Shown here piece after piece: positions 1-64,000 of a stretch of DNA of 64,000 bases. The first letter of the stretch is position 1. Each line of letters opens with the position of its first letter. The notes under the pieces were generated by a model. The model was not told where the DNA came from. It saw only the letters and a program-made list of their open reading frames with translations, and did no database searches. The translations under genes and the position numbers were made by a program. The stretch lies in assembly GCA_000388065.2 (NCBI GenBank), contig KB932210.1. One strand, written 5' to 3'. This stretch comes from Fonticula alba ATCC 38817. Lineage: Eukaryota > Protista > Nucleariida.

Positions 1-20
1 AGAGGGGCCGGCTAGCGCAC

Positions 21-3000
21 CGTCCCAGGGGGTGGCCCGGTGGAGGCACTCCCACAGCATGATGGCCGCGCTGTAGATGTCCGCCGGGAGGTAGTGGTCC
101 CGGTCGAGCGGGCGCTTCCGGTGGAAGGCGGCCAGCACCTCCGGCGCGGCGTACCGTGCCGTCAGGGCGTTCAGCTCCGGCGCCTGGCTCACCAGGGTGG
201 ACGACCGGTCGGTGCTGAGGTTGCGCGAGGTGCCCAGGTCGCCGAGGGCCGCGCGCCAGCCCCCGTCCAGGCGCTGGCTGACAAACACATTGCCCGGCTT
301 CAAGTCCCGGTGGGCGATCCCCTGCGCGTGCATGGCCTCCAGCCCGGAGGCCCACTGCTGGCAGATGTCCAAGATGGCGCCCTGGTCCAGGGGGACGTCC
401 GAGTGCAGCAGCGTCGCCAGGTCCGTGTCGAAGCGCTCCATGACGATGGCCGGCGGCTGCTCGCTGTACCCGTACAGCCGGACGACATTCGGCGCGTCGC
501 GCAGCAGCCACATCAGCGCCACCTCGTTCTGGAAGAGGGTCACCTGCGTGGGGGTCATGCGCGCGGCCTTCAGCTGCTTGATGGCCACGGTGCTCGGGCA
601 GCCCAGCCGGTCGGAGATGCCGGCCCCGACGGCGTGTGCCGCGAACACCGACGCCTGGGTCCCGGCGCCAAGCTGCTCCTCGTTCAGCGGGGCGAAGTCA
701 TTGGCAATGCTCACCAGGATGCTGCCGGGGAGCGACAGCTCCAGCATGGTGTTCAAGACCGTGGCGTCCTCATCGTCGTCGGTCTGCGTATTACGTGGTC
801 GGTGGGGTCGGTGGTCAGTGGGGTCGGTGGGGCCAGTGGTCAGTGGGGTCGGTGGGGCCAGTGGTCAGTGGGGTCGGTGGGGCCAGTGGTCAGTGGGGTC
901 GGTGGGGCCAGGGGCCGGTGGGGTCGGTGGGGTCGGTGGTTGGCTGAGCTCCGCGACAGGCCGGGGGGAGAGCGCACCTTGGTCGGGGCGCCGCGCTGGC
1001 GGCGCAGCCGCAGCAGCAGGAACAGCACCAGCAGCAGGAGCAGGAGCAGCAGCAGCAGCCCCAGGCCGATGCCCAGGCCGAGGGCTGTGTTCAGTGAGGC
1101 AGTGGTCAGCACACAGCAAGAGGGCGCAAATCAAAAGTGGTGCTCGCACGTACCGAGGCGGCGACCGGATGGCTTGTTGCTGCTGCAGTCCGCCTCCCCG
1201 GGACCGATGCACGTCTTGCAGTTGGCGTGGCAGGGCGCGCAGGCCGGCGCCGGCGCGTCGCGATCCGCGAACGTCCCATCCGGGCAGCTGGCCACACACG
1301 CACCCCCCAGCACCAGCAGGCCGGCCTCGCACTCGAGGCACACGTCGGCCACCGGGCAGGACAGCTCCCCGTCCGGGCCGAAGGCGCACTCCGGGGTGCC
1401 TGGCCCGGCGGCGCACCGCTCGCAGCCGGCCGGACAAGCAAGGCACATTCGTCTAGGTAGGGGGGGCACCGCGGCCGGGAACTCGACCGCGACCAGCCCG
1501 CCGGCCGGACAGGCGCTCAGGCACATCCCATCGCCCGCATGCAGCCAGGCATCCGGGTCCATGCACGAGGTGCAGTGCTCGGCTGCGCCGAGGCATGTCC
1601 AGCAGGAGGGGCCGCATGGGGCGCAGGTGCCGGAGCCCGTGCTGTACTCGCCGGCCGGGCAGTCGGCAACGCACTCGCCGGTCGACGGGGACAGGACGAA
1701 GCCGCCCTCGCAGGCCAGGCAGCCGGGCGTGCAGCCGACGCCGGGCTGCTCGGCGGCCACCACACACTCGGTGCAGTTGGCCCCGCAGGGCTCGCACATC
1801 GTCGTGACCCCGCAGCCGAAGGTGCCGGCCGGGCAGACACCCACGCACAGGCCCCGGTCAAGGTACGTCTGGCCAGGGCATACTGTGCACTGGTCGGCGG
1901 CCGCCCCGGCGCAGGCCAGGCAGGACCCATGGCAGGCGCCACATGTCCGGTCGGCCTCGGCAAAATACCCGGCTGGGCAGCTGGTCAGGCATGCGTGGCC
2001 ATGCATGACCCGGTCCGCCGGGCAGGCCGTGCACTCGGCGGCCCCGGGCCCGGAGCACGCGCCGCAGGTCGAGCTGCATGGGGGACATGCCGCCCCGCTC
2101 TGGAAGGTGCCGGCCGGGCAGGTGGCCAGGCAGCGGCCGTCCACCAGGAGCGGGGCGTCCGCACCGCACGTCAGGCAGTGCTCCGGCCCCGGGCCGTAGC
2201 AGGTCCCGCAGGACTCGTGGCAAGTGGCACACAGACCGCCCAGGGCCACCGAGGAGCCGGGGCACTGGTCGACACAGGCCGGGCTGGCCAGCAGCCACCC
2301 GCGCTCGCACAGGGCGCAGGTAGTGGCGCTGTGCGGGCAGCTGGAGCAGTGCTCCGTGCACTGGCGGCAGCCGCTGGCCGAGGTGTGGTACCCCACCGGG
2401 CAGGCCCCGGCGCAGCGCGAGGGCGACTGCTCCGCCGGCAGGGCGAGCAGGTCCCCCGGACACCCGGTACACTCGGTGCTCCGGACCCCGGCGCACTCGG
2501 AGCACGAGGCGTGGCAGGCCAGACACCGCCCCGCGATGGCCACATGCCCGGCCGCGCAGGCCTGCACGCAGTCGTCGCCCTGCAGCACGGCCCCGGCGCA
2601 CCGCCAGCAGTCCTTGTCCGTGGGGCCGTTGCACGTGGCGCAGGCCGCGTCGCAGGGCAGGCAATCAGCACCCGCACGATACTCGCTCTCCAGGCAGCCG
2701 GACACGCAGGTCCCCACGCCGGGGGCCGCCTCGACAAGCTCCAGCCCCGCGCCGCAGCCGGTGCACTGGTCGGCCCCGCCGCCGGCGCACGTCCGGCAGC
2801 TGACGTCGCACGGCTGGCACGACTCGCCGTTGCTGAACGACCCGGCCGGGCAGTCGGTGATACACTGCCCGTTGGGGCCCAGTACGAGGCCGGCCTCGCA
2901 CACCAGGCAGCCGCTCGCCCTGCAGGAGGCGCACCCAGGATCACAGGGGACGCATGTGCCGGTGGCGCCGGCCGCCGGCGGGCCCGCGGCCCAGCGGAAG

Positions 3001-6000
3001 CCGGCCGCACACACCAGGCACCGGTCGGCCCCCTGGTCGCACAGGGCACAAGACCCATCGCATGTGACACATCGGCCCGCGCCGGCATACTCGCCCGGGG
3101 CGCAGGTGCTGCCGCACAGCGAGGGCGCCTGGGGGTCCAGGAACACCAGGCCCGATCGGCACCGGGTGCAGGCACCGGCCCCGGTGCACTGCTCGCACGA
3201 CGCGTCGCACGGCCGGCAGGCCGGCACCTGGCCAGGCGTGCTGCTGGGGAAGAAGCCGGCCTGGCACTCCGAGCACATGTTCCCCAACGGCTCGCACGCA
3301 TTGCAGTGGTCGGGGCAGGGCAGGCACGCGGCGACAGGCCCGTTGGTCCAGGTCCCCGTCGGGCACGCCGACACACATGTTCCCTGGTGGTTGAGCTGGC
3401 CGGGATGACAGGAGGAGCAGGCGGCCGGGTCGTCGGGCGACAGGCAGGTGGCGCAGGACTCATGGCACTCGAGGCACATGTCGCGCTCCGGCAGGCGAAG
3501 CATCCAGCCCGGCGGGCACTTGGTGCACTGGTAGGGGCCGATATCCGGCGGGCCGAGCGACGTGCACTCGCTGCAGGAGGCATGACATAAGCACGGCCCA
3601 CCCGGCACGGAGTGCATCCCCGCCGGACACTGCTCCAGGCAGACGCCCGGCGAGTCGGAGAGCCACGCGCGGCAGGCGGTGCAGTGGCCCTCGGTCGGGC
3701 CATCGCAGGTGGCACAGACGGCATGGCAGCCGCCGCAGGCGGGCGCAAACTGCCCGGGCTCCGGGCAAGTCAAGAGACTCAGCCGCAGGATGGTGGCCCG
3801 GGGGCCCGCGGTGGCCAGCAGCAAATCCCCCAGCATCTGGTCGGCCTCGGGGGATCCGGCGACCGGCGGCGCCAGCGGCACGGCTGTCACCCAGTGCACG
3901 GCCGGGGAGCTGCCGCCGGGAGGCCCGAACGGGAGCCCGGCAAATGCCCGCCCCGGCAGAAGCCGACATCCGCCCACCGGGCCGGGCACGGTCGGGCACT
4001 CCAGCAGCGCCACATGGATTTGGTCCTGCGTCAGCAGCAGCAGCGCCGAAGGGTGGCGAATGGCGCCGAAGGAGCTCCCGCGGGCCGCCGACGCCGACAG
4101 CTCCACCCCGATGACGCGGTAGTCCTCCGACGAGCCGGGGGTCACGCCCGGCAGGACGGCCAAATCCTCCAGGCTGTATGACAGGGCCTCCAGGCGCAAG
4201 TGCGGCACCAGCCCACGGGGAATGTGCGCCACGCGCCAAGCCGCACCGCCGGCCGGGCCCTTCGGCCAGGCAAGCCCCGACAGGAAGACCTCGGCCGTGG
4301 CCTCGGGCCGGCCCGTGGCCAGGGCGACCGCGCGCCAGCCACTCGGCAGTGCCGCCGGCAGGGCGTCCCGCCCGGCGGCCACATCCACGCGCGGGTCGCT
4401 CGTCACCACCAAGCCCAGCGGCAGGATGGCCGCGCCGTGGGTGCCGGGCGCGTCCTCGGCCAGCAGGGGCTGCAGCAGCATATCCATGTCCACCCCGGCG
4501 ACCGCCGGCGCCGGGATCAGCACCGGATGATGGCGGAAGGTCGGGTGGGCTGGCAGCTGTGCGACGGCCCCGGTGTCCGGGTCCACGCGCAGGTACGCCA
4601 CGCCGGCGGCCAGCTCCACCGTCACAAGCCCCCCATCGGCCGGCAGGTGGCGCAGGCTCTTGGCCCCGGGGAGGTCCAGCGCATAGAACGAGTCGACTGC
4701 CACCTGGCAGCCATCCGCCGCCGGGGGGGGGCCGTTGGTCAGGCATCGAAGCTCCGCCACCGAGAGAAGGCCATCCTCATCGGCCAGCAGCGCCACCGCC
4801 AGGTTCGCCGAGATCGACACCTCGACGTAGGACCGAACACGGCCACTGTCAAAGAAGTTGGCGGGCAGGGCCTTGGCGAAGAGCTCCTCTCCCGGGCGCG
4901 CCAGCAGCCAGTGTGCCTGGCCGGCGGTGGAGAAGGTCAAAAAGTGCCCCGGCGGCCAGGCCCCGGGGTGCAGGACGACGGTCTGGTCCTCGGTCACGCG
5001 CAGGCGCGTTTGCGCGACGAGCACCACCGGGGTGCCAGCCGCGCCAGGCAGCTCGAAGTTCCTGGCCTCCAAGCCCACCTGGGCGTCCCACCACCGAGGC
5101 ATGCACCGGTTGCCGGCCTGGGAAAAGCGCTGGCCGCATGAAGAGACACACCGGGCCCCGAGCGAGGGGTCATCCTCAAGTAGCCAGCCCGTGTTGCACA
5201 CGAGGCACTGGCCGCCAGGCATGCAAGTCCGACAGTTTGGCGGGCATGGCTGGCAGGATCCTAGGTCGAGAGTTGGCAGAGGGGATGGGGGACCAGGGGG
5301 TCGAGGTTGTGGAAGGGGGGTCGTGGGAGGGGGGTCGTGGGAGGGAGGCCGTGGGAGGGAGGTCGTGGGGGGGAGGTCGTGGGAGGGAGGTCGTGGGGGG
5401 GAGGTCGTGGGGGGGAGGTCGTGGGGGGGAGGTCGTGGGAGGGAGATCGTGGGAGGGAGATCGTGGGAGGGAGGTCAGGGAAGGGAGGTCGTGGGAGGGA
5501 GGTCATGCAATGAAACGCGGAGAATCAAACGCGGCGAATCAAACGCAGAGCATCGAGATCAGGGCTCGACCAAGCCCAAGCGGGGGGCGGCAGGCCCAAA
5601 GGCACGAAAAGGGCATGACATACCGGAATGCGGCAGCAAGTGGTCCCCCAGAGTGAAGCCGTCCGTGCATCCGGCACACAGGACCCCGGGAACAGCGAGG
5701 GCGGCCCGAGCGCGGCCCGAAACACACCCATACCCCTCGATTCTGAGCGAGGGGTCGGCCTGTGGCGAAACGCACTCGATGGACCAGTCATCGGTGCAGA
5801 GGAAATCCGCCGGCTGGAGGTAGGCATACTGCTGGCCGACCAGGGCCCAGGTGCGAGCGCTGCCTGCCTGCCCGGTCACCAAACGGGCAAGCCTGAAGCC
5901 AGTGGCCCCATCGTCCGAGGCCCCGGCCGGGGGGATGGCCCGCCGCCAGGTCAGCTGGTGCCCCTGGCTGGGGGCCGCGACGATCCACAGCCCGCTCGAG

Positions 6001-6995
6001 CCACTGGCAAAGACCGCCCAGCCAGGCGGAGTGTCCACCTCGCCGGGGCCCAGGTCGAGAAAACGCCCCCCGGCGGGATGGACCCCCTGTGGGATCGAGT
6101 CCAGTGAGTGATCCAAACAGAGGCCAGTCAATTGTGACGGGTCGCTTGTACAAGTGCAAGTTTGGTCGTTGTCCAGGACAATGATGCGCATGTGGTGGCC
6201 ATTCTGGTTGGTCGAGTAAAAGTGTGTCCCCGCCACGCCGAGCACATTGCCCGGGAGGTTGTTGAACAGATTGACCAATTGGTGACTCGGGTAGAGGGGC
6301 AAAAGGACCATGATGATATTGTTGTTCCACACGACAAAACGGCCCGCGGTCTCGACCACGGCTCCCAGGTACGACGCCGGCAGATTGATGCTCGTGATGA
6401 TGTCTGCTCCGAACGCGCCTCCATGGAACTGGTACAGTTTCAGATGACCTTCCTCCGAATGGAAGACCAGGAAGGCGACCTTGCTCGGAGATGAGGCGGA
6501 GATGGCCAGCACCCTGCTCGATGCCGGGATGATGGTGGTCTTCCACTGCGAGCCGTCCAAAACAAGCAGGAGCCCCGACCCGACACCGACCAGCGCCGGG
6601 CCCTGGCGAGAGGACACCAGACGAAGGGCAACCTCCTGGGTGCCGGTCGGCAGGGGGATGGTCTGGGTGGGGAGCGGCCGGCCGAAGGCCCCGCCAACCC
6701 GATAGTCGGAGTTTAGGTCCAGCCTCAGGCCGGTTTGGGTGGCGCAGTCCGTCTCGCCGGTGGTCTGCACGGCGCACAGGGTCCCCGGCTGATCGGGCCC
6801 ATGCGAAAGGATGCTCATGCCGGGAGCGGGGCTTTGGGTGAAGGCCCATGGCTGCGCCTGGAGGTACATGTCGGGCAGCATTGTCGGGGCCATTCGAGCC
6901 AGGGGCAAGCCCCAGGCGGCCAACACCAGGAGGAGAGCCACCAGCGGGCCCGGGGCCCAGGAGCGCCGGGCTCCTGACCATCGGCCGCGCGACAT
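21..6995 (-). CDS. RK1: FU-repeat receptor Ser/Thr (TKL-like) kinase; last exon lies off the left edge
   Basis: Exons 6995-5624, 5260-1154, 1084-978 and 783-21; GT..AG introns of phase 1,1,0,1 keep the frame. Kozak-like GCCACCATG, signal peptide (PLVALLLVLAAWG), CxxC/FU repeats, TM ALGLGIGLGLLLL, kinase VAIK/HRDLKPGN/DLG/APE. Donor GTGCGC at 20 matches the intron position in the 12841-13751 fragment. Confidence 0.9.
795..945. repeat. Intronic minisatellite (25-bp unit x~4, built from 9-bp GGGGTCGGT/GGGGTCAGT subunits) in RK1 intron 3
   Basis: GTGGTCAGTGGGGTCGGTGGGGCCA recurs at 811, 836, 861 and 886; a shorter homologous array lies in RK6 intron 3 (~42197-42270). Confidence 0.85.
5314..5505. 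repeat. G-rich intronic minisatellite (GGGAGGTCGTG(G)n, ~15-bp unit) in RK1 intron 1
   Basis: More than 10 imperfect copies of GGTCGTGGG(A/G)GG inside intron 5261-5623. Confidence 0.85.
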
Positions 6996-7233: not shown

Positions 7234-10200
7234 AATCAGCACCCGCACGATACTCGCTCTCCAGGCAGCCGGACACGCAGGTCCCCACGCCGGGGGCCGC
7301 CTCGACAAGCTCCAGCCCCGCGCCGCAGTCGGTGCACTGGTCGGCCCCGCCGCCGGCGCACGTCCGGCAGCTGACGTCGCACGGCTGGCACGACTCGCCG
7401 TTGCTGAACATCCCGGCCGGACAGTCGGTGACACACTGCCCGTCGGTGCCCAGCACGAGGCCGGCCCCGCACACCAGGCAGCCGTCCGCCCTGCAGGAGG
7501 CGCACCCAGGATCACAAGGGACGCATGTGCCGGTGGCGCCGGCCGCCGGCGGGCCCGCGGCCCAGCGGAAGCCGGCCGCACACACCCGGCACCGGTCGGC
7601 CGCCTGGGCGCACAGGGCGCAAGACCCATCGCACGCGGCGCATCGGCCAGCGCCGACATACTCGCCCGGGGCGCAGGTGCTGCCGCACAGCGAGGGCGTC
7701 GAGCTTTCGGTCGCCAGGAACACCAAGTTGCTCCGGCAGGTGGTGCAGGCGCCGGCCTCGGTGCACCGGTCGCACGAGGCGTCGCACGGCCGGCAGACCG
7801 GGCCTCCGGCCGGGCCGATGAAGTGCCGCGCCGGGCAGAGGGCACACGTTTCCACACCCGCCGGGCACTTGAGGCATGGCGCCTGGCACGGGACGCAGTG
7901 GGCCCCCTGCGGGGCGAAGCCATCCGGGCAGGCGGCCACACAGGCCCCCTGGTGGAGGTAGTGGCCGGCCGGGCACGAGATGCAGGCAGCCGGGTTGCCA
8001 GGCAGCGAGCATTCGGCGCACGATGCATGGCACTCATAGCACCGGTCCCGGGGGAGCAGCGGGTCCGCGTCCACCGGCAGCAGAGCCATCCCCATGGTGC
8101 AGGAGACGCACTGGTACTCCTGCACCTGCGGGTCCGGCTGCAGGCAGAGCAGGCAATCCCCATGGCAGTCGCAGTGGTCTTGGCCGTTGGCGTGCAGGCC
8201 GGCCGGGCACTGCCCGACGCACATGTCACTCGGCCGGTCGCGCACGGTGAGCGTGCACTCGGTGCAGTGCTCCGGCCCGGGCCCGGTGCACTGCCGGCAT
8301 GCCGGGTCACAGGCGAGGCACTCCTCCGAGTAGGTGGCCGCCGAGCAGACGTCCAGCTCGATGGTCAGCAGGGCCGGCTGGCCCGGGGCCAGGGCCAGCG
8401 CGACGCCGCGCCCGGGCCCGGCCGACAGGGCCCCCGCCGGCCCGGCCGCCGGCAAAGCCACCAGACCCACCAGCGAGGGGTCCGGCATGCCGGGCGCCGG
8501 GAACACCCGCCCGGGCAGGAGCCAGCACTGCCGGCTTGGCGAGGCCGACGGGCAGTGCAGCAGCGAAAGGGCCACCCTGCCGTCCGCCAGCAGGAGCAGC
8601 AGCCCGCTCGGGTATTCCGCGTGGCCGAGGCGCACCGGGGCCGCCTGGAAATTGTCCCGCACCGCCGGCGCGGCGGTCAAGTCCAGCAGGGGCAGCCGGT
8701 TGAAGGGGATGTCCTTGGTCCGGCCGTGCGGCCGCAGGCCGTGCGGGTAGAGCTGCGCGATCCAGGTGACCCGGGCCCCGTCGGGCGGGCTGGCGTCCAG
8801 GAGCCCGGTCAGGAGGAACTCCTCCGGGCGGCCCGGCTGGCCGGTGGGCAGGGCCACCGCCTGGAGGGTCGGATGCCGGGCCGAGGACATGGGCATGGCC
8901 AGGAGCATTTGCTGCGTGACGCGCGGGTCCTCGGCGACGAGCATTTCCAGCGGCAGCAGCACATCCGCGTTCAGGGCGGCCATATGAAGCAGCTGGCCCA
9001 TGGCCACCATGGCCGGGTCGGCAAGTGGCTGGGGGAAGGGCGCCGGCAGGGCCGACACCGAGATGCCGGTGTCGACCAGCTGGGCCGTGCCGTCCGGCCG
9101 GACGCGGATCAGGATCACCGACTTGGCCAATGTCACCGCGGCCGCGGTGGTGGCGTTCACCCGGACCAGGCGCGACGTCGGCGAGTGGTGCAGGCGGACG
9201 CCGCCGGCCGGGTCGGCCTCCGCCAGGCAGGCAGCCCCCGTGGACGGGGGTGGCATGCCCTGGCACAAGATCCGCCGGTAGTCCAAGCCAGCGGGGCCGG
9301 TGCTCAGGGCCACGAGGACCGGGTGCCCGGAGGGCTGGCGGCTGGCGGCCACCAGCTCCAGGTACGAGTGCGCCCCCGGCATGGCCACCGACAGGCCGAG
9401 CGGGGCCGTGGCATCCGGCATGCCTCCCGCCCCGCTGGCCCAGAGGATGCTGCCGTCCTGGTGGAAGAGCAGCAGGTGCTCCCCCGGGCCGGCGGTGCTG
9501 GCCCCGGGCTCGAGCCAGCCAATGCGCGGGGTCGACTCGCCGGCCTGCCGGACCAGGCGCGTGGATGCCACCAGGTCCACCTGCGAGTGCCACTTGGCGT
9601 CGGCCCCCGGCAGGGGCAGCACCCCGGCCGAGGCCCTCAGGTGGGCCCTGGGCGCCGGCAGGCAATAGGCCCCGCGATCGAGGAACCCCTCGTCGCAGGT
9701 GAGCACGCACCTTTCGCCGGCCGGCGGCCCGGCGTCAATCTGCAGCTTGTGGCCATCATCACACACAAGGCACCCGTCGACATTGGCGCACGCCCGGCAC
9801 AGGGGGTCCTGGCATTCGGCGCACGGGGTGCCTGCGGGCGGCGGTGGTCAGTGTCGGCCCGGCCGAGGCGGCAGAGGGTGGCCCTCCGGCACGTACTGTC
9901 ATCGAGCGGCAGCATGGTGGTGGTGCGCCCATCGGCGCAGGCCGCGCACAGGCGCCCATCCTGGGAGAAGATCGAGCGCGCCCGGCCGGCGACACAGTCC
10001 CAGCCGAGGATGTTCTGCGGGTCCGGGGGCTCCGGGGCGCCATTGCAACGGATGGTCCGGTCGTGGATGGCCCCGGCCCCGGCCCCGGGCACGCAGCCGA
10101 AGTCCACACTGTCGAAGTAGACATACTGCCCGACCAGGGCCCAGGCCCCCGGGGCGCCGAAGCCTCGGCGCATGAGGGCCGGCTTCAGGCCGGTGACCGG

Positions 10201-18217: not shown

Positions 18218-18287
18218 GTATGTCTTTCCTGCCCTTCGCTGTCCGGCCGGTCGGCCGCCCCGTGGTGTATCCTGCCCTTGCCCCTTG

Positions 18288-18288
<1 letters not shown>

Positions 18289-18324
<36 letters not shown>

Positions 18325-18395
18325 CTCTCAGTTTCTCTCAGTTTCTCTCTTTCTCAGTTTCTCTCTTTCTCAGTTTCTCTCTTTCTCAGTTTCTC
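18289..18395. repeat. (CT)n / TTTCTCTCAG microsatellite in RK3 intron 1
   Basis: Visible CT tract followed by degenerate TTTCTCTCAG/TTTCTCTCT units. Confidence 0.85.
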
Positions 18396-19595: not shown

Positions 19596-19635
<40 letters not shown>

Positions 19636-21705: not shown

Positions 21706-21732
21706 NNNNNNNNNNCCCCCCCGATGGCCCAG

Positions 21733-52707: not shown

Positions 52708-55700
52708 ATGACCATGGGCCTGCGCACCGTGGGCGCTTGGCGGCCGCCACGGCCATGGCCGGTGCCGCTGCTGCTGCTGCTGCCGCTGCTGCTGCCGCTG
52801 CTGCTGCTGGCCGCCGGCTGCTGGGGCCCAGCGGCCCGGGCATCGCCCACGTCGGCCCTGGAGGATGGCGCCGGGCCGGGCCTCGACCTGGCCGGCCTGT
52901 CCCGGCACCTGGGGAGTCTCCCCTGGCAGGGCGCCCCGGCGCCGGTCCGGCCGCTCGCCAGCAATCCCCCGCTGCCGTACAGCCAGACCCCGAGCCCCCT
53001 GTTCGAGCATTACAATCCCAACGCGGTGGTGGGCTTCTTCACCAGTGGGCTGGGCTTCCATCGTAGCCAGCTGGCCCTGCCGGGGCCCGAGGGCCTGGTG
53101 ATCGTCCACGGGCAGGCGGATTTGCTGTTCAGCCTGAATGGCGACTCCCGCTCCGGGTCGCTGCTGCGCGGTGCCCCGCTGGCGATGCTGGGGGCCCACC
53201 TTTCCCCGGCATTGTCCGGGTCTTGGAAAATGCTGGTGGCCGAAGGCCAGCAGGGGGCCGAGCTGATCGCCCTGTCACCCGGCCAGGTGGGCCACTTTCG
53301 CAACAACCAGTGGCATCTGGCCAGCTTCTCGACGGCCGTCACATACCTCGCGCACGGGGTTCCCCACCAGGGCGCCGTCCATCTGCTGATGCACCAGCCG
53401 CTGACCCAGGGCCTGGAGCTTCGCTACCTCTCGACCACCAGCACCGTCAAGCACTTTGCGTTTGCCACCCCGGCCGGGGCCACGCCTCGGGCCATCCTCG
53501 ACCGGTCGGGCTACTTCCTGGTCTGGCACCAAGCGACGCTGGCCATTTTCCATGTGGATTCCCCCCCCGGCGCCGGGCCCACCTGGTCGACCACCCTCGC
53601 GGAGCCCCTCGGCGACCTGGTGTCCCTGCCGGTGTCGGGGAATTCCAACAACGGCCTGGTGTCCATCTTTGACAGTGGCGCCATCTATGTGTGTCCGGAC
53701 TTTGTGAGCGGCGGGTGCAATGACACCTGGCAGGTGGACCTGTCCGGGGCCGGGCTCCCGCCAGGCGCCCGGCTGCGCGCCCACGGGTCGCCTCACATCA
53801 GTCTCGAGCCCACGACCCCGGTAAGGTGGATGCTCCTGCGCGACGAGGTGTCCGGGCGCCTGTTCAGCCTCTCCCTGGTCAGGGGCGACGCGCTGCCGCT
53901 CACCGAGCTGGTCATGCCGGCCGGGGCCCCGGCCTCGGCCTCGCTGCGGCCCTTCCTCACGGCCACCGGGTCGACCTCAGCCACATGGGGCCTGACCGAT
54001 GGCTGGGAGCTGCTCCTGCCGAATCACTTCTTCTGCTCCGGCGACCCCACCATCCTGTGTGCCATGCAAAGCCACTCGTCCCTGCCGAGGGGCTTCTCCT
54101 GCGCCGCGTCTCGCGGCCTGTCGCTCTTGAACTTCCCCGGCGCGCTGTGCGGCGGCTGTGCCGACGGCATGGCCATGGGGGCCGATCCCAGCGCCGCGGC
54201 CCGTATGTCCTTTCCTCACCCGCGCGTCGTCGCCCACGCGCGCCCGGTGTCCCCCCCCCCCCCCCCCTCGCCCTGGGCTTCCTTCCTGCCGGCCACGCGC
54301 CGGAGCTAACCCTGCCTTGCGCCCGCGCCCGCGCCCGTCCCCGCCGGCCCCACGCCGAAGCCTGCACAACCTGCCCCATGGAGAAGTGCAGCGTGTGCGC
54401 CGGCTCCTCCTGCCTCGTGTGCTCGGACACACACTTCTTGCTGGTCGACCCGCAAACCGGCGTCGGCTCGTGCGTGGCCGCCTGCCCGCCGGGCACCGAG
54501 CCACAGCCGGGGGCTTCCCGGTGCATGCGCCCGGAAAATGCCCCCCTGCCGGCTCTGCCGACGGTCGCGCACCAGCTCAGCCCGCTGGTGCTGGACCCGT
54601 CGGACCCGGGCCCGCCGGCCATCCTGTCGATCCTGCCCTCGCGCCTGCATGTGTCCAACGGCGTGTGCCTATTCCACCCGACCGGCGTGACCGCCGAGCA
54701 GCTGCTCGGCAATGCGGTCCTCTTCCGGTCGGGCGGCGCTGCGCCCCTGTGGCTTCGGCCGGACCCCAGCAGCCCGGGATCCCTGCTGTCGAGCCAGATG
54801 CCCTGCTCGATTGTCCCGGTGTCCGGGGTGGAGCTCACATCGGCGGTGGAGGTGCCCCCGGTCGTGGACGCCCACGGTACGGCCACGATCCATGTGCTGG
54901 CCTGTGACCGAGATGGCACCATCTACCTGTCCTCCTTCACTTGTCCCAACTCGGGTGCGGCGCAGGGCTGTCTCCTGGTGCTGGCCGCCGTGCCGAAGGT
55001 GCTGTCCGGGCTCGGTTGCGTCGAGGTGGCTCTGCTGGGCGACAGCCTGGCCGCCTTGCGCTTGGCCAGCGGCGATGTCTCGCTGTTCCAATTCGCCCCC
55101 TCGGTCGATGACACATTGGAGGCCGTCCTGCCCGGGGTCTCCTGGCTACCGGTGCTCTTTCCCGGGGTCCGGGGCTGGACCGGGCCCAGCTCGCCCGCCG
55201 GGTGGGTGTTCCAGCCGCCAAGCCAGCCACTCGGCCTGCCAACCGGCGTCCTGTACCCGCTGGATCTCCTGATGGGCAAGGACCCGCGCGCCCAGGCCAC
55301 CAAGCGCTGGGGGGCCCTGCGCGCGCGGCAATCGCCCCACAGCCCGGGCCTCGCAGATCTGGAGCCGGTCCTGCTGGCGGGCGTTCGCCCGGCCGGGGCC
55401 ACCCCGGCCTCCCCTCCGACCGGGGAGTTTTTCCTCTCCGGAATGCACTACGACGCCACTCTGCAGTGGGTTTGGACGGTGGCGCACCCGCCCTTCGGGG
55501 CTCACTACACCGGCCGCACATCGGCCATCCCGTACAATGTGGAAATCCTCGGGCGGATCTCCGGGCCGAGCCCGCTCTTCGACGGGCTCCCCTACCGGAC
55601 CCTGCCCGTGGTGCTGTCCTGGTCGGAGGAGCTCCCCGGGGCGCTGGTTCTCCTGACCCCCAGGGTCCTGGGCGTGGCGCTGGTCCAGTGTGATGGGTCT

Positions 55701-58700
55701 TCCGGGTGGGTGTGCCGGCTGCTGCCGGCCCAGTTTTTCGCCCTGCCCTCGGAAATCCCGGGCAATTTGTCGCACGTCGCCCTGCTGCCAGTGGCGCATG
55801 CTCCGGCCCCGGCCGGGCTGGCCGCCACCGGCCACCAGCCGGCAAGCGCGCGCGGCTCCGCCAGCCACGTCCCCACGTCCACGGTGCTGCTCATGGCCAA
55901 GGGCCTGGACGCGCCTCTGGTGCTGACCCTGAGCGAGCACCGGTGCCCGGTGGGCACCTTCGGCCCGGCATGCGCCGACTGCAGCCCCGGGTGCGCCAGC
56001 TGCACGGGCCCGGCCCCGGCCGAGTGCCTCGCCTGCCGGCACTGGCTCCCCGGCTGGGAGTCCGAGTGTCTGCCAGCCTGCGATGGGCTGGCCGTGCCGA
56101 TCCCCGGCCGAGCGGACTGCGCTTGTAGCGACGTGTGCGCCCGGTGCGAGGTTGTCTCGGTGGCCGGCACCAATGTGGCCTCCTGCGCCGAGTGTAACCC
56201 CGGCTGGGCGCCGCCCCCCCCGGCGGGGTCCCCCTCGGCGGTGCCCTGCCAGCAGTGTGCTCCCTCCTGCGGGGAATGCTCGCTGCCGGGCGATGCCGGC
56301 CGCTGCACCGCCTGCCTGGAAGATACGTACCTGCACCTGGGCCAGTGCCTGGCCGCCTGCCCGGTGGGCTTTGTCCCGGACCCGGCCCGGCAGGAGTGTC
56401 GCCCCTGCCCGAGCGGCTGCCTGGAGTGCTCTGCCGAGGGGACCTGCTCGCGCTGTGCCCCGTCGCTCTTCTGGGACAGCCCCAGCCTGCGGTGCAGCCC
56501 GTGCCATGGGTCGTGCGCCGAATGTCGCAGCCATGCCTCCTGCACCGCCTGCCGGCCGGGGCTGGTGTTCCTGGCGACCGAGCCGGGCCTGGAGTCCCTG
56601 TGCGGGAGTGTCTGCGGCCCGGGCGAGTATGTCGGGGCTGGCCGGTGCGCCGTGTGCGATGCCTCCTGCGCCCTGTGCGCCGGCAGCGCCGCCGCCTGCC
56701 AGGTGTGCGCGGCTGGCTTCCGCTGGACGGCGAGCCCGCCGGCGGCCGGCGGCACCGGGTCCTGCACGGCCTGCGCGGCCGGGTGCTCCTCCTGCACGGC
56801 GGCCCGCTGCCTGGCCTGCGAGGATGGCCTGCTCCTCGATCGCCAGGGCGCATGCGTGTCGGCCTGCCCGGCCGGCACATACGCCACCGACGAGTCGTGC
56901 CAGCCGTGCGACGTCAGCTGCGCCGCGTGCGCCGGCGGCCGGGCCGACCAGTGCACCGGCTGCGGGGCCGGGCTGGAGCTCGTCGAGGTGGGCCCGGCCG
57001 TGGGCACCTGCGAGTCCAACTGCCTCGAGGGCCAGTACCGGGACACGAGCTCCAACGCGTGCACGGACTGCCACGCCGCGTGCGCCACCTGCAACGGCCC
57101 GTCCGACAAGGACTGCTGGCGGTGCCGGGATGCCGTGCTGCAGGATGCCGACTGCGTGCAGGTGTGCGCGGCCAGGCACGTGGCCCTGGCCGGGCGGTGC
57201 CTGCCCTGCCATGCGTCGTGCGAGCAGTGCGCCGGGGTCCGGAGCACCGACTGCACCGCCTGCCCGGGGGAGCTGCGGGCCCTGCCGGCCGGGGCGTCGC
57301 CCATGCGCTGCGTGGCCGGCTGCCCGGTGGGCTACCACACCGGCGGGGCCGGGTGCGCCAAGTGCGGCGACCGGTGCACCAGCTGCCCCGCGGCGGCCGA
57401 CACATGCGCCCTGTGCGACCGGGGCTTTCTGCTGGGCGCCGGCGCCTGCGGGACCAGCTGCCCGGCCGGGTCCTCGCCGCAGGGGGGGCTGTGCACCACC
57501 TGCCACAGCACCTGTGCCACCTGCTACGGCCCGGAGCCCGGCCACTGCCTCAGCTGCTCGGCCGACACGCCGCTCCTGACGGGCGGGGCCTGCTCTGCAA
57601 CCTGCCCGGATGGGACCTTCCAGGATGGGCAAAGCTGCCTGCCCTGCCATGCCACCTGTGCCGCGTGCTCCGGCCCCGGGGAAACCGAGTGCACGGTGTG
57701 CCCGGCCGACCGTGCTCTGCTGGCTGGCACGTGCCTTTCCGCCTGCCCGGCCGGCTATCACCGGGCCCCGGCCGGCGGCGGAGCCCCCAGCGACCGATGC
57801 CTCGCTTGCGATTCGTCCTGCCGCGAGTGCAGCGGCACCGGCAGCTCCGAGTGCACCTCGTGCCATGGCATCGACCTGCTTCTCGAGGGCCGGTGTGTGG
57901 ACGAGTGTCCCGCGGGGACCTTCGGCTGCAGTGCCTCCGGCCGGTGCGACCCCTGCGACGCCCGGTGCGCCGAGTGCACGCTGGCCGCCAACCTCGGGGA
58001 CCGCTGCACCGCCGACTGCCACACCTGCAGGGCGGGCTTCGTCCTGTCGCCCTCGACGCACACCTGCGACGTGGCCTGCCCGGCGGGCGAGTTCACGCCG
58101 GACTCGGTCCTGTGCGCCGCCTGCGACGCCGACTGCCGGTCGTGCCACGGGCAGGCCAATGCCTGCACCTCCTGCGCGGACGCCTCGCGGTGGCTGCTGC
58201 TCGATGGGGCCGCCTGCGTGAGCAGCTGCCCGGGGGAGAAGTTCGCCGCGGCGGAGTTCCCCTCGGCGCCCTTCCCCGCGCCGGCCCGGGTGTGCCTGTC
58301 CTGCGCGCCGGGGTGCCTGCGGTGCGAGGCCGGCCCCGGGCTGGCGGCCTGCTCCCTGGCCGCGGACGGGCTGCTGGCCTGCCCGGAGGCGGACGTCTGC
58401 ACGGCGTGCAACTCGCCGCTGCTGCTGCACGGGGGCCGGTGCGTGGGCGAGTGCCCGGAGGGCACGTTCGCCGACCCGGACGCCCCGACGCCGGCCTGCC
58501 TCGCCTGCCACGCGAAGTGCAAGGCGTGCACCGGGCCCGAAAGGGCCGACTGCATCGGCGGCACATCCTCCTCGCGGGGCCTCGGTACGCATGCTGCCCC
58601 TGCTTTTGTTGACACACCCTGCGCACACGCATCGCTGACCGGCGGCGCCTCGCCGGGCCTTGCCCGCATCAAACGCGCCTCGCTCGCTCGCCCCGGCTGT

Positions 58701-59961
58701 CGGACGCCAGCCCTCGGCTTGGGCATCGGCCTGAGTCTGCTGCTGCTGCTGATCCTCCTGCTGGCTGTTCTCTTCTTGTATTTGCGCTTCCGCCGCCAGC
58801 GCCGCGCCCCGGCCAAGGTGCGTTCACATGCCACCGCCTCCTCTATCCCCCCCTCCCCCTCCTCCCTGCTGGCTGAGCTGTGCCCCGCCCCCCTGACACG
58901 CCCCCGCCTGGCCGTGATAGCATCTCGATGACGAGGATGCCACCGTGCTCAACACAATCATCGGTGCGCTGCGCGTTGCCTTGCCTGCCTCTTGGTGTTG
59001 GCCCCCTTCCACCCAGCTGCGCGCGCATACTGACTCGGCGCTCCACACGGGTGCAGAAATTTCCCTCCCCGGCAGCATCCTGGTCAGCGTGGCCAATGAC
59101 TTTGCCGCCCTCAATGAGGATGCCCTGGGCGCCGGGACCCAGGCGTCGGTCTTTGCGGCGCGCGCCGTCGGGGCCGGCATCTCCGACCGGCTGGGCTGCC
59201 CGGGCACCGTGGCCATCAAGCAGCTGAAGACCGCGCGCATGACGCCCACGCAATTTTCCCTCTTCCAGAACGAGGTGGCCCTGATGTGGCTGCTGCGCGA
59301 CGCGCCGAACGTCGTCCGGCTGTACGGGTACAGCGAGCAGCCGCCGGCCATCATCATGGAGCGCTACCAGACGGATCTCGGCACGCTGCTGCACTCGGAG
59401 GTGCCGCTCGAGCAAGCGGCCCTGCTGGACATCTGCCAGCAGTGGGCCTCCGGGCTGGAGGCCATGCACGCGCAGGGCATCGCCCACTGCGACCTGAAGC
59501 CGGGCAACGTCTTTGTCAGCCAGCGCCCGGATGGCAGCTGGCGCGCGGCCCTCGGGGACCTGGGCACCTCGCGCAACCTCAGCTCCGACCGGTCGTCGGC
59601 CCTGGTGGCCCAGCCGCCGGAGCTGAATGCCCTGACCGGGCGCTACGCCGCGCCCGAGGTCCTGGCCGCCTTCCAGCGGAAGCGCCCGCTTGATCGCGAG
59701 CTCTTCCTCCCGGCGGACATCTACAGCGCGGCCGTCATGCTGTGGGAGTGCCTGGCCCGGGCTCTCCCCTGGGAGGGGGCCTCCTTCGATGAGATCGCCG
59801 CGCATGTGCTGGCCGGCGACCGGCCGGACCTGGCGCGCGCCCCCGCCGCCGGGCCCCTTGCCGACCTGCTCCACATGGCGTGGGACTCCAACGCCCCGGG
59901 CCGGCCGCTGGCCGCCTCCTTCCGGCAAAAGTGCGCCATGCAGGCGGCCCTCTGTGTCTGA
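52708..59961 (+). CDS. RK8: complete receptor kinase, ~2257 aa, non-RD (HCDLKPGN)
   Basis: Exons 52708-54202, 54361-58584, 58711-58817, 58921-58963 and 59057-59961 (sum 6774 nt = 2258 codons). Intron 1 has branch GCTAAC at ~54305. ATG 52714 (ACCATGG) is an alternative start. Confidence 0.9.
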
Positions 59962-60511: not shown

Positions 60512-60513
<2 letters not shown>

Positions 60514-61913: not shown

Positions 61914-64000
61914 ATGCGGTCGCTCGGCCGGCTGAGGCTGGTATGGGCTCTTCTCGGGGCGTGGCTGGCCGCCGGGCCGCTGGCTGGCCGGGCGGCCCCG
62001 CCACCGGGGGCACCCCTCCGGGCATGGGACCGTGAGACCCCCCTGCCGGAGGCGGCGCCCATCTACTTCCACCAAACGCTCCTGCCTCTGTCGCAGTGGG
62101 CCGACCAGCCGGGGCACATGTTCGGCAAGTTCTTCTCCACCGAGCTCCCCATGTCGGGGGTCTTCTCCAGCACCGCCCATGGCCGGCTGTATGCCATGCA
62201 GGATGTGGCAGCCAGCCCGAATGCCGACATGCGCATCGGCAGCCTCGTGTCGGCCGAGCCCCATAGCACCGTCGGCATGGCGAGCCTTGTCGCTGGGCCC
62301 GGCGCCGTGGCTCTTGTGGTCCCCACGCCGCAGGGGCCCGCCCTGGCCTCGTACGTCCCGGAAACCGGGGTCTTCAACTTCGCCACCGGCCCCACCAAGA
62401 TGGAGTTCGACTTCGGCGTCCCGATCCGGGTGCTGGCAGCCACGGCCCGAAGCCCGACGCTGCTCATGGTGCTCATGTACTTCCCCGACAGCCGGGAGGT
62501 GCTTCTCACCCGCTGGGAGCCGGCCGACATGGATTCACACACCCTGGTGGCCCTTGCTCCGGGGGATGCCGCCCCGGTCGGGGCCACCGCCGGCCCGGAT
62601 GGAAGCTTCCTCTTCTGGAGTCCCAACCACCTGGCCGGGGCCTTCCTCCAATGGGACCAGCCCCTGAGGGATGTAAGCATCCTCCAGCAAGGGCCGCTGG
62701 ACCGCATCCGCCATGTGGCCCTCCTGCACCTGACCGCGGCTGCCCCCTCGCTGGACATGGCCTTACTCTTTGAAAACGGCCGCCTGGACCTCTGCTATGA
62801 TGTCACCACCGGCATCTGCAGCCCCCACAGGTATGTTCTCCTCCCGGGCGGAGGTGTTTCCGCGGCGGCCACCATCCTCGGGCCGCCGGCCGGCCAGCTG
62901 CCCAGCAAGACTCCCCACCATTGGCTGGCCGTGCATGACCCCTCCCAGGAGGCTCTCTGGCGGCTGGACGTCCTGCCCTCCGGCCAGCCGGTGTCCTGGA
63001 AGCGCATGGTCCTCCCCGGGACGGTGGCCAGCCAAACCGGCCTCCTGCTGCGCGAGGTGAAACTCGGCTCGCATGGCCTCCAGTGGCTGGTGCTCGCCGG
63101 GGCCCATGGCTACATGCAGTCGCCGCACTTTGGCTGCGACTCCGATGTGACCGTCACCTGCAACAGCGGCCAGGGGCCGCCTGCGCCCGGTGATCGGGGA
63201 TTTGCCTGCGCCACCGGTCGGGCCCTTTCGCCCTTCATCGCCCCGGGGCTCCTGTGTGCCGGCTGCCAAAGTGGAAATGAGGCTCCCACCGGCTGGAGCT
63301 CCCCCGGTACGCATCTCCCGGTGGTACCGGGGCCCCTGCATGTGTGCCTCCCCCCCCCCTACACCCCAGGCCGGGGTCTTCCTTTCTTGCATGCTCCTCT
63401 CCTCCCCCCGACCCGCCGACTCGCAGCGTGCGCACCGGCCACTCGCCATGCTGCCTGGATTGGCCACTGACGCCGCGCATCGGGCTCGGCTCATCCTGTG
63501 CCGCGCCTCGCCCCTGCCCCCCCCCCCTCCCCCCTCCGGCGCAGCCATCTGCTCGGGCTGCCCGCCCGGCTGTGAGACCTGCCACGGCGGCCGGTGCCTG
63601 CTCTGCGTGGGCGACCGCCTTCTCCTGGAGGACAACTTCGAAAGCGACACGACGCAATGCCTGGACCAGTGTTCGCCCGGGTTCCAGGTCGCCGCCGGCA
63701 GCCGGCGCTGCGTCCCGCAACAGCCTGGCCACTTCCGGAATCTGCATCTCCAGCCGATGACCCTGCCCTTTGACACGGGCGCGGAGCTGCGGTTCCTGGC
63801 CCGGAGCTGGCTTCGCCTGGACCTGCTTACGGGCCACCTGCTGGTGCTTTCGCGCGACAGCAAGGTGATGGTGGAGGACAACCTCCTCGGCTTCCTGTCC
63901 ACCCGGTCGGCCGCCTGGCTGGCCGGGGACTATGTCCTGCAGCAGGGCGTCCATCCGATCGACGGGGCCCTCATGCCGGCGGACCTGTTCGGAGCCGAGC
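61914..64000 (+). CDS. RK9: receptor kinase paralog, runs off the right edge
   Basis: MRSLGRLRLVWALLGAWLAAG signal peptide; domain-A Cys motif (FGCDSDVTVTC...GFACATGRALSPFIAPGLLCAGC). Exon 1 61914-63306; intron 63307-63544 (GTACGC..CAG, phase 1); exon 2 from 63545 (AICSGCPPGCETC...) open to 64000. Confidence 0.85.

What the first reader, a model, noticed from the sequence alone, without database searches (positions are those of the whole stretch)
1..64000. Tandem array of ~8-9 giant receptor kinases with hypervariable distal ectodomains on a conserved stalk/TM/kinase: candidate recognition-receptor repertoire
Seen: the genes and gene fragments share one architecture. The ~450-aa exon-1 domains align only through scattered motifs, whereas FU repeats, TM and kinase are near-identical in blocks. 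Established: variable-tip/constant-base tandem families underlie recognition or antigenic variation elsewhere (Dictyostelium TgrB1/TgrC1, plant RLK clusters, Entamoeba transmembrane kinases, Giardia CxxC VSPs). Inference: this is a diversified ligand-sensing system (kin/self recognition, prey or pathogen sensing) in a protist. The A-FU-B-FUn-TM-kinase layout superficially parallels EGFR/insulin-receptor L1-CR-L2-CR, but with a Ser/Thr-type kinase and non-LRR domains.
Basis: partly seen in the sequence, partly recalled or inferred. Interest (0 to 1): 0.85.

Follow-up and report, generated by a model that had tools for sequence, protein, structure and literature searches.

The report
Two-propeller receptor kinase array in Fonticula
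This stretch of the slime-mould-like fungal relative Fonticula alba holds nine neighbouring genes for large cell-surface sensor kinases whose outer heads are very different while their stalks and inner signalling parts are kept alike by copying between neighbours; what they sense is unknown.

Summary
The window is Fonticula alba. It carries nine receptor-kinase genes or fragments: A, B and Z on the minus strand, and C to H on the plus strand.

Each gene has the same layout: signal peptide, domain A (about 430 aa) with a six-Cys cap, one furin-like module, domain B (about 440 aa), about 17 furin-like modules, a transmembrane segment, and a TKL Ser/Thr kinase. AlphaFold models show that both head domains are beta-propellers with no Pfam match, so they are not EGFR L domains.

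Paralogue identity is about 23% in domain A and 21-39% in domain B. It rises sharply to 80-100% from the fourth or fifth stalk module onward. Kinases are 71-98% identical.

That conserved half has low dS (0.02-0.46), whereas synonymous sites in the heads are saturated. Its identity extends into introns, and the closest partner changes along the gene. This points to gene conversion, not only purifying selection.

All ten assembly gaps matter:
- Six cut genes at or in repeated blocks.
- One contig looks misplaced.
- One annotated protein fuses genes B and A.

A domain A profile finds 52 proteins among 1.84 billion. All 33 that I checked are from Fonticula. No paper describes the family. Other scan notes flag similar kinases elsewhere in this genome.

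"Hypervariable" and "kin recognition" remain untested.

The parts
1..6995 (-). Gene A. Exon 1 (signal peptide, propeller A, Cys cap) about 6995-5622; exon 2 (FU1, propeller B, stalk) about 5261-1134; TM exon about 1090-990; kinase 810-19, which runs off the window start.
   Evidence: It is the second half of the annotated fusion model P0055.
7234..11346 (-). Gene B. Exon 1 is 11346-9892 and exon 2 is 9829-7238. The gene is cut in the stalk (E aa 1326) by gap 7024-7233, so the rest of the stalk, the TM and the kinase are not assembled.
13127..13751 (-). [not shown]
16834..27400 (+). Gene C. Exon 1 is 16834-18216. Exon 2 starts just after gap 21706-21715 and runs to 24145, then resumes after gap 24146-24985 at 24986. 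Stalk, TM and kinase read as one open frame to 27091, with no introns flanking the TM. The C-terminal lobe is in another frame, which suggests a gene-specific intron. The stretch 18459-21705 inside 'intron 1' is probably a misplaced contig.
28470..35860 (+). Gene D. Propeller A is at 28811-29842, with an apparent frameshift near 28812. Exon 2 is 29961-32578, with a frame change near 30950-30983. The gene is interrupted by gap 32579-33158. The stalk continues at 33159-34388. The kinase is at 34589-34861 and 35352-35855, split by gap 34863-35350. D is a possible pseudogene, or the frame changes are assembly indels.
   Evidence: RNA contigs match its stalk exactly over 505 nt.
36305..43227 (+). 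Gene E, the only complete and gap-free copy (annotated protein of 2177 aa). Exon 1 is 36305-37688. Intron 1 is 37689-37880 (GT..AG, phase 1, seen in RNA). Exon 2 is 37881 to about 41987. The TM exon is about 42054-42160. The kinase exon is 42283-43227. In protein coordinates: propeller A aa 35-400, Cys cap 405-455, FU1 465-522, propeller B 523-960, 17 CxxCxxxC modules 970-1807, TM 1827-1850, kinase 1900-2160.
40011..43200 (+). The homogenised (converted) part of gene E: stalk modules 5-17, the TM exon with both flanking introns, and the kinase. The equivalent tracts are A 1-3224, B 7234-7801, C 23948-27091 and D 32415-35855. F and G share a separate tract.
44597..51463 (+). Gene F. Exon 1 is 44597 to about 45910. 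Exon 2 is about 46160-50141. Gap 50142-50713 removes the end of the stalk, the TM and the juxtamembrane part. The kinase is 50714-51463, ending in a stop codon.
52714..59950 (+). Gene G. Exon 1 is 52714 to about 54190. Exon 2 is about 54350-58589. The TM exon is about 58700-58830. The kinase is 59041-59946. Its catalytic loop reads HCD instead of HRD (codon TGC at 59488-59490).
   Evidence: RNA samples hold 60-70% of the sampled words of its head.
61914..64000 (+). Gene H. Exon 1 is 61914-63332. Exon 2 starts at about 63535 and runs off the window end. The annotated protein has 2088 aa.

Best explanation
SHOWN. The window is part of a larger cluster of a Fonticula-specific family with at least 52 gene models. 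The proteins are single-pass type I receptor Ser/Thr (TKL-like) kinases. The ectodomain is a head of two unrelated beta-propellers. Propeller A is closed by a six-Cys cap, followed by one furin-like module, then propeller B. The head sits on a rod of about 17 furin-like/EGFR-domain-IV-type modules. A transmembrane helix and a kinase with intact catalytic motifs follow.

The nine copies here keep old, mutually very different heads. The membrane-proximal stalk, the TM exon with its introns, and the kinase are repeatedly overwritten between neighbours by gene conversion. This includes inverted neighbours 41 kb apart.

INFERRED. Each head binds a different extracellular ligand. Binding brings receptors together, and the Raf-like kinases activate one another and feed one common downstream pathway. 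The family would then be a repertoire of sensors with many inputs and one output. Homogenising the base would keep all members compatible with the same partners, and possibly with each other.

The most likely ligands are external cues: bacterial prey, surface glycans or environmental molecules. Cues exchanged between amoebae during collective feeding and aggregation are the second choice.
For: - Architecture.
- Kinase: Pfam E 7e-31, VAIK, HRDLKPGN, DLG and APE motifs present, and Raf kinases are the best solved match at E 1e-14.
- Expression and splicing: the GT..AG phase-1 intron of gene E is seen in an RNA contig, RNA contigs lie on D and E, and 60-70% of the sampled words of G's head are in two RNA samples.
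- Gene conversion: dS is 0.06-0.33 in the proximal stalk and 0.02-0.46 in the kinase, against saturated heads. A and E are 94-100% identical at the DNA level through both introns flanking the TM exon, while coding sequence just upstream is 73-78%. A's nearest partner changes along the gene from C to B to E to D, and the runs of agreeing sites are longer than in shuffled site orders.
- Old heads: domain A sequences from this array interleave in a tree with members from other contigs.
- Family size and restriction: 52 proteins among 1.84 billion representatives, all with E <= 1e-10. All 33 that I looked up are Fonticula alba, arranged in several tandem clusters.
Against: - No ligand, localisation, phosphorylation or phenotype data exist.
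- The structure models rest on only 7-8 sequences each and have medium confidence.
- Roughly half of the family's gene models lack a detected kinase. Some are clearly truncated by gaps, but others end just after the TM. The family is therefore not uniformly a kinase family.
- The mosaic pattern lies exactly where the short-read assembly broke, so some partner switches could be chimeric assembly. The head-to-tail linkage of C, D and F crosses gaps and is unproven.
- Gene D has frame breaks. Gene G has a non-RD catalytic loop.
- Head divergence is saturated, so nothing shows that the heads are under diversifying selection rather than simply being old and weakly constrained.
Confidence: 0.62

Rival explanations
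1. Kin or self recognition system for aggregation, of the Dictyostelium TgrB1/TgrC1 or clustered-protocadherin kind. Heads would bind heads of neighbouring cells, and the repertoire would encode identity.
For: - Fonticula aggregates to form fruiting bodies (established knowledge; Worley et al. 1979 and Brown et al. 2009, as cited in PMC8061703).
- The variable-head, constant-base array resembles such systems.
- The family is restricted to this lineage.
Against: - There are no polymorphism data. The one 2025 DNA run that I laid differed from the reference only by isolated single bases.
- The diversity is between about 50 old paralogues, not between alleles.
- No paired ligand-receptor gene arrangement is evident.
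- The heads of E and G are both present in bulk RNA of the same samples.
- Tgr proteins have Ig/IPT folds and no kinase.
Confidence: 0.12
2. The near-identical blocks and their mosaic pattern are mainly artefacts of a short-read assembly. Collapsed or chimeric repeats and wrong joins across gaps would produce them, so there would be no real concerted evolution.
For: - Near-identical blocks abut most gaps.
- A 986-bp stretch occurs twice at 100% identity beside gaps.
- One contig appears to be misplaced.
- Gaps in C and D remove the same segment.
- Contigs from independent assemblies are only 100-500 nt long in these regions.
Against: - The blocks are 88-99% identical, not 100%, so paralogue-specific differences were resolved.
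- Logan contigs from the original reads, from two RNA samples and from a 2025 DNA run reproduce the reference over pieces of 100-500 nt, mostly with 0-3 differences and with a few further single-base differences elsewhere.
- Gap-free genes A, E and G show the same gradient and the intron identity.
- Family members on other contigs still have 53-90% identical kinases against 22% identical heads.
Confidence: 0.12
3. Purifying selection alone keeps the stalk, TM and kinase alike, with no gene conversion. The heads are simply unconstrained.
For: Kinases are always more constrained than ectodomains. Across different contigs the kinase is still about 65% identical against 22% for the heads. Kinase omega is 0.15-0.67.
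Against: - Synonymous divergence drops from saturation to 0.02-0.46 exactly where amino-acid identity rises.
- Introns flanking the TM exon are 91-100% identical between A and E.
- Partners switch along the gene.
- Omega in the homogenised stalk is a relaxed 0.4-0.8.
Confidence: 0.04
4. Variant surface coat or adhesin family, like Giardia VSPs. The cysteine-rich rod would be the functional part, and expression would switch between copies.
For: The stalk matches Pfam VSP at E 1e-17. Many paralogues lie in clusters. Some family members have only a TM tail.
Against: - Fonticula is a free-living bacterivore with no host immune system to evade.
- There is no VSP-type CRGKA tail.
- The kinases have intact catalytic motifs.
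- The variable part is the propeller head, not the CxxC rod.
- At least two heads are co-expressed in bulk RNA.
Confidence: 0.05

Closest known systems
EGFR / insulin-receptor family (L1-CR1-L2-CR2-TM-kinase)
   Same: The order is the same: globular domain, Cys-rich module, globular domain, Cys-rich rod, single TM, cytoplasmic kinase. The rod matches the Pfam GF_recep_IV and furin-like models.
   Different: The globular domains are beta-propellers, not L-domain beta-helices, and there is no Recep_L_domain hit. The rod has about 17 modules. The kinase is Ser/Thr TKL-type (HRDLKPGN), not a tyrosine kinase.
Sema-PSI receptors (MET/RON, plexins)
   Same: An N-terminal propeller of 7-bladed type is followed at once by a small Cys-rich cap. 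The protein is a single-pass receptor with a catalytic tail.
   Different: There is no Pfam Sema or PSI match, and the best structural matches are generic WD40-type propellers. There is a second propeller, a furin-like rod rather than an IPT rod, and a Ser/Thr kinase.
Plant receptor-like kinases and receptor-like proteins (RLK/Pelle, RLP) in tandem clusters
   Same: Both are large lineage-specific expansions of single-pass Ser/Thr receptor kinases of the TKL group. Both have diverse ectodomains and conserved kinases, sit in tandem arrays, and include kinase-less relatives.
   Different: The ectodomain folds differ, and the origin is independent. The closest solved kinases here are Raf kinases. 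Here the base is homogenised by conversion. No role in immunity or development is known.
Entamoeba transmembrane kinases and Giardia VSPs
   Same: Both are protist multigene families with CxxC-rich ectodomains. The stalk matches Pfam VSP at E 1e-17. The Entamoeba TMKs also carry a kinase.
   Different: Those families lack the two-propeller head. No Entamoeba or Giardia protein appeared among the sequence hits. There is no VSP tail motif.
Dictyostelium TgrB1/TgrC1 and clustered protocadherins (variable head, constant base)
   Same: Both are arrays of surface proteins with variable outer parts and a common inner part, in organisms that must tell cells apart.
   Different: Tgr proteins and protocadherins use Ig/IPT or cadherin folds and have no kinase. 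Protocadherins share the constant part by splicing, whereas here every gene has its own copy kept alike by conversion. Allelic polymorphism, the hallmark of Tgr, is untested here.

Membership tests
Single-pass receptor Ser/Thr kinase (general class) | N-terminal signal peptide and one transmembrane helix separating an ectodomain from the kinase | tested here: met
   A hydrophobic N-terminus follows the start Met in A, B, C, E, F, G and H. A run of about 24 Leu/Gly/Ile/Val residues is followed by RLRRQR. This was read from the sequence; no dedicated predictor was run.
Single-pass receptor Ser/Thr kinase (general class) | Protein kinase domain with catalytic Lys, HRD Asp, Asn, and the DFG-type Asp | tested here: met
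   Pfam Pkinase E 7e-31. VAIK, HRDLKPGN, DLG and AAPE are present in A, Z, C, E, F and G, but G has HCD. D shows HRDLKPGN, DLG and AAPE; its VAIK region borders gap 34863-35350.
TKL kinase group | Kinase domain closest to TKL members | tested here: inconclusive
   The best solved relatives are B-Raf and Raf-1 at E 1e-14, and the public annotation says TKL. No kinome-wide phylogeny was run.
EGFR / insulin receptor family | Receptor L domains (Pfam Recep_L_domain) flanking a furin-like region | tested here: not met
   There is no Pfam hit on either globular domain even at E = 1. Both fold as beta-propellers.
EGFR / insulin receptor family | Tyrosine-kinase catalytic loop (HRDLAARN type) | tested here: not met
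   The catalytic loop is HRDLKPGN in all copies.
Sema-PSI receptors | Sema-type propeller and PSI domain recognisable by profile or fold | tested here: not met
   There are no Sema or PSI Pfam hits. No Sema, plexin or MET chain is among the top 50 rows shown by either Foldseek or VIA.
Giardia VSP | CxxC-rich ectodomain | tested here: met
   Pfam VSP E 1e-17 on the stalk, above the gathering score.
Giardia VSP | Short conserved cytoplasmic tail directly after the TM, with no enzymatic domain | tested here: not met
   A 330-aa juxtamembrane and kinase region follows the TM.
Dictyostelium Tgr allorecognition proteins | IPT/TIG (Ig-like) ectodomain repeats | tested here: not met
   There are no such Pfam hits. 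The heads are propellers and the rod is furin-like.
Dictyostelium Tgr allorecognition proteins | Extreme allelic polymorphism between isolates | not testable with these tools
   No run from a clearly different isolate was identified. The one 2025 DNA run that I laid showed only isolated single-base differences.
Gene family under concerted evolution (gene conversion) | Synonymous and intron divergence is low inside the tracts and saturated outside, with mosaic partners | tested here: met
   The caveat is that the tracts coincide with assembly breaks.

The most novel reading that the evidence does not exclude
The array would be a recognition code for the only known aggregative member of the fungal side of the opisthokonts. 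Propeller heads of different paralogues would bind each other, or secreted partners, between amoebae. The shared, conversion-homogenised stalk-TM-kinase would let any combination of heads signal through one pathway. That would be a kinase-coupled counterpart of Tgr or clustered-protocadherin systems that arose independently.
Probability: 0.12. Interest if true: 0.85.

Novelty: new variant of a known kind. Interest (0 to 1): 0.6.

Why it matters
To my knowledge, fungi and their relatives are usually described as having few or no receptor kinases. Fonticula is the earliest-branching, aggregating relative of fungi. It turns out to devote at least 52 gene models to a receptor family with a head architecture found nowhere else among about 15 billion proteins. 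That is close to 1% of a gene set which I take, from memory and without checking, to be about 6,000 genes.

This gives concrete candidate sensors for prey detection, collective feeding or aggregation in an independent origin of multicellular behaviour.

It is also a clean natural example of modular evolution inside single genes. Old heads are kept apart, while the signalling base is kept uniform by gene conversion, with a sharp boundary inside a repeat rod.

On the practical side, the public gene models here are wrong in several places. One model fuses two genes across a gap, and others are fragments. Kinome or receptor counts for this species are therefore unreliable.

Tried and rejected
- RNA reads of 2026 carrying the second species label (runs X17, X18, X21, X24) gave no reads at all on gene E. 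That label does not deliver this organism's RNA, and one of the two read-laying runs was lost.
- The word-based homologue search with domain A found only the protein itself. The exhaustive profile search was needed.
- Domains A and B are not detectably homologous to each other (hhalign probability 0.2%). The idea of a duplicated head module is therefore not supported by sequence, although both are propellers.
- dN/dS on the heads cannot be interpreted. Values of 0.7-1.6 come from saturated sites, so I do not claim positive selection.
- Long ORFs in the spacers 11-16.8 kb and 18.5-21.7 kb have no Pfam match and no domain A or B signal. Weak tblastn hits there were Pro-rich low-complexity sequence.
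- No gap was bridged by contigs of the original or the 2025 DNA runs.
- The resemblance of the propellers to bacterial propeller lectins (PLL, PHL, CV39L) is no better than their resemblance to intracellular WD40 proteins. I do not use it as evidence for glycan binding.
- A location effect on kinase identity across the whole 619-kb contig was not seen: the median is 0.70 within the contig and 0.67 between contigs. Homogenisation is confined to a subcluster that includes this window.

Full report
IDENTITY AND CONTEXT

The window has 70-77% G+C outside its gaps. Protein searches place it in Fonticula alba. The best relatives of a stalk-TM-kinase query are "TKL protein kinase [Fonticula alba]". 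The translation of 36305-42001 is 100% identical to a 2177-aa Fonticula protein on a 619,120-bp contig. Earlier scan notes on this genome name the same organism.

GENE CONTENT

A profile of the exon-1 domain, searched over all six frames, finds eight copies with E from 1e-38 to 1e-171 and nothing else. A search with kinase queries finds seven kinase domains. Together with tblastn of the intact gene E, this gives nine genes or fragments.
- On the minus strand: A (1-6995), B (7234-11346, cut by a gap) and Z (13127-13751, a kinase fragment only).
- On the plus strand: C, D, E, F, G and H. H runs off the window end.

The minus-strand block and the plus-strand block are arranged head to head. Four tRNA genes lie between or beside the genes.

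ARCHITECTURE, READ ON GENE E

- Signal peptide.
- Domain A, aa 35-400.
- A six-Cys cap, aa 405-455.
- A phase-1 intron.
- One furin-like module, aa 465-522.
- Domain B, aa 523-960.
- Seventeen CxxCxxxC modules with a period of about 48 aa, aa 970-1807. They match Pfam VSP at E 1e-17 and GF_recep_IV at E 1.5e-11.
- A short intron, a TM exon, and another intron.
- A juxtamembrane region and the kinase (Pkinase E 7e-31).

The first intron (37689-37880, GT..AG) is confirmed by a spliced contig from an RNA library. The public model uses the same junction.

The catalytic motifs VAIK, HRDLKPGN, DLG and APE are present in A, Z, C, E, F and G. In gene G the HRD arginine is replaced by cysteine. Gene D shows HRDLKPGN, DLG and APE; its VAIK region borders gap 34863-35350. 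The closest solved kinases are B-Raf and Raf-1 at E 1e-14. This fits the TKL label but was not tested by phylogeny.

THE TWO HEAD DOMAINS

Neither domain has a Pfam match, even at E = 1.

AlphaFold2 models were built on the paralogue alignments, and both are all-beta:
- Domain A: pLDDT 71, pTM 0.75.
- Domain B: pLDDT 75.5, pTM 0.82.

In AlphaFold DB, the two best matches to domain A are independently predicted Fonticula paralogues (TM 0.71-0.73). Everything else is generic, with TM around 0.45.

A profile-profile comparison shows no sequence relationship between A and B.

The head is therefore propeller, cap, furin-like module, propeller. It is not an L-domain pair.

THE GRADIENT

Pairwise identity among the paralogues:
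- Domain A: median 23% (range 18-31%).
- First furin-like module: about 36%.
- Domain B: 21-39%.
- First four to five stalk modules: 32-47%.

At about aa 1181 of gene E (window position about 40011) identity jumps to 80-100% among A, B, C, D and E. F and G stay at 50-70% to that group but are 96-98% identical to each other in a block further down. Kinases are 71-98% identical.

One refinement applies: the variable part is the whole distal 1,180 aa, not only exon 1.

WHY THE BASE IS CONSERVED

Third codon positions are 86-90% G+C. Unrelated sequences are therefore expected to differ at 0.59-0.62 of such sites. The heads show pS of 0.45-0.67, which is at or near full saturation.

In the proximal stalk, dS falls to 0.06-0.33 within the A-E group. 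In the kinase it falls to 0.02-0.46. Omega there is a fairly relaxed 0.15-0.83.

Genes A and E are inverted relative to each other and lie 41 kb apart. Their DNA identity is 94-100% through the short intron, the TM exon and the start of the next intron. Coding sequence 150 bp upstream is only 73-78% identical between A and E, but 98% identical between A and C and between A and D.

A's closest partner changes along the gene: C, then B, then E, then D. For most pairs, the runs of agreeing polymorphic sites are longer than in 500 shuffles of site order. That test is inflated by the overall heterogeneity between regions. The partner switching is not.

In a tree of domain A, the window's heads sit on long branches and interleave with members from other contigs. 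Only E, F and G group locally.

The simplest reading is that the heads are old lineages and the 3' halves are homogenised by gene conversion within a subcluster. Across the whole family the kinase is still 65% identical against 22% for domain A. Ordinary constraint therefore adds to the effect.

THE GAPS

There are ten N runs. Near-identical blocks end exactly at most of them, which shows that the assembler broke at the repeats.
- Gap 7024-7233 separates B's stalk from A's upstream region. At least 3 kb is missing, and the public 3455-aa model that reads B and A as one protein is an artefact.
- Gap 13752-61 leaves kinase Z without the rest of its gene.
- The gaps in C (24146-24985) and in D (32579-33158) both remove E aa about 1220-1425, the most homogenised segment. 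Their N counts do not preserve the frame.
- The gap in D's kinase covers 63 aa but is written as 488 N.
- The gap in F removes the stalk end, the TM and the juxtamembrane part.
- 13762-14747 equals 20720-21705 exactly, and both copies touch gaps. This is the signature of two overlapping contigs placed in the wrong order. Contig 18459-21705 probably belongs left of 13762. Intron 1 of gene C would then be a normal few hundred bases rather than 3.5 kb.

Contigs from the original reads, from two RNA samples and from a 2025 DNA run did not bridge any gap. In this region they come only as separate pieces of about 100-500 nt. They matched the reference mostly with 0-3 differences per piece, plus a few further single-base differences elsewhere.

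The word depth rises from about 150 in single-copy heads to 600-4,700 in stalk and kinase segments. This fits many near-identical copies in the genome, although the tool warns that summed depth is not a copy number.

INTEGRITY AND EXPRESSION

A, E, G and H are open as far as they can be seen. Gene C has no introns around its TM segment and appears to have a gene-specific intron in the kinase C-lobe. Gene D changes frame near 28812 and near 30950-30983, so it is either a pseudogene or carries assembly indels.

RNA contigs cover E's head at low depth and D's stalk. Two RNA samples hold 60-70% of the sampled words of G's paralogue-specific head. At least E and G are therefore transcribed in the same bulk cultures.

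THE FAMILY

The domain A profile, scored against 1.84 billion representative proteins, finds 52 proteins, all with E <= 1e-10.

Of these, 33 were checked. Thirty were looked up by exact sequence, and three more were named by earlier searches. Every one is from Fonticula alba. They lie on at least ten contigs in several tandem clusters. Consecutive accession numbers show that this window's array continues upstream on the same contig.

Among the public models, 23 have a detectable kinase and 28 have a detectable domain B. A few end right after a TM segment. Four models contain two domain A matches well apart in the protein. One of them (P0055) was shown here to fuse two genes; the other three are probably fusions as well.

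No paper in the searchable library describes these proteins.

INTERPRETATION

What is shown:
- The proteins have a receptor-kinase architecture.
- The head is a novel two-propeller design.
- At least two heads are expressed.
- The family is a lineage-specific expansion.
- The signalling half evolves in concert.

What is inferred:
- Different heads bind different ligands.
- Ligand binding clusters the receptors.
- All receptors feed one pathway.

I rank sensing of external cues, such as prey bacteria and environmental molecules, first. The diversity lies between many old paralogues, as in plant receptor kinases. Cell-cell signalling during collective behaviour comes second. Strict kin recognition gets about 0.12, because its defining feature, allelic polymorphism, cannot be examined. 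Antigenic-variation-like switching is unlikely for a free-living bacterivore.

Part of the mosaic could be an assembly artefact. The gradient itself cannot be, because it also holds in the gap-free genes A, E and G and across contigs.

VERDICT

This is a real and largely undescribed receptor family with an unusual head and a textbook-quality case of partial concerted evolution. Its function is open. It is a new variant of a known kind, namely expanded receptor Ser/Thr kinases.

Other scan notes flag similar giant receptor kinases on other pieces of this genome, and several notes on sub-features of this same window exist.

Noticed in passing
13762-14747 and 20720-21705: A 986-bp stretch, including a tRNA-Val(AAC) gene, occurs twice at 100% identity, and each copy abuts a 10-N gap. 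This looks like two overlapping contigs scaffolded in the wrong order, which would put contig 18459-21705 inside intron 1 of gene C by mistake.
   Followed up: partly
7024-7233 and the public protein model covering 22-11346 (-): The annotated 3455-aa 'TKL protein kinase, partial' reads gene B and gene A as one protein across an assembly gap. Other models in the window are fragments: an 865-aa model is C exon 1 plus spacer sequence, and a 205-aa model is the start of F.
   Followed up: yes
11933-12004 (+), 14653-14726 (-), 21611-21684 (-), 27491-27564 (-): tRNA-Gly(GCC) and three tRNA-Val(AAC) genes sit between the receptor genes. One tRNA-Val is part of the exact duplicate. The tRNA-Val flanks at 14636-14765 and 27474-27603 are 97% identical. 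They could be duplication or conversion boundaries.
   Followed up: no
59479-59508: Gene G's catalytic loop reads HCD (codon TGC) where all other copies have HRD (CGG). This makes it a non-RD kinase if the base call is right.
   Followed up: partly
26135-27400: Gene C reads from the last stalk module through the TM into the kinase without the two introns that flank the TM exon in A, E and G. It seems instead to have an intron of about 100 nt after the motif ending FDG (near 27091). Its kinase is the most divergent of the array (71-76% identity, omega about 0.6).
   Followed up: partly
28470-31000: Gene D changes reading frame near 28812 (inside propeller A) and near 30950-30983 (inside propeller B). 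It is either a transcribed pseudogene or carries indel errors in the assembly.
   Followed up: partly
about 23400-23480 (gene C stalk): A run of 16 glycine codons interrupts one furin-like module of gene C. Microsatellite-like repeats (GT/CA, CT) fill introns and spacers, for example at 18300-18448, around 19400 and around 61800.
   Followed up: no
gene E, 36305-42001: Four sludge, soil and sediment metagenome runs hold 5-11% of the sampled 31-letter words of gene E. This may mean that close environmental relatives of Fonticula carry the conserved stalk and kinase. They could supply the missing population data.
   Followed up: no
family members outside the window (public models on other contigs): Several domain A proteins end shortly after a TM segment with no kinase, for example models of 1271 and 1311 aa. 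The family may include kinase-less receptor-like proteins as well as receptor kinases.
   Followed up: partly
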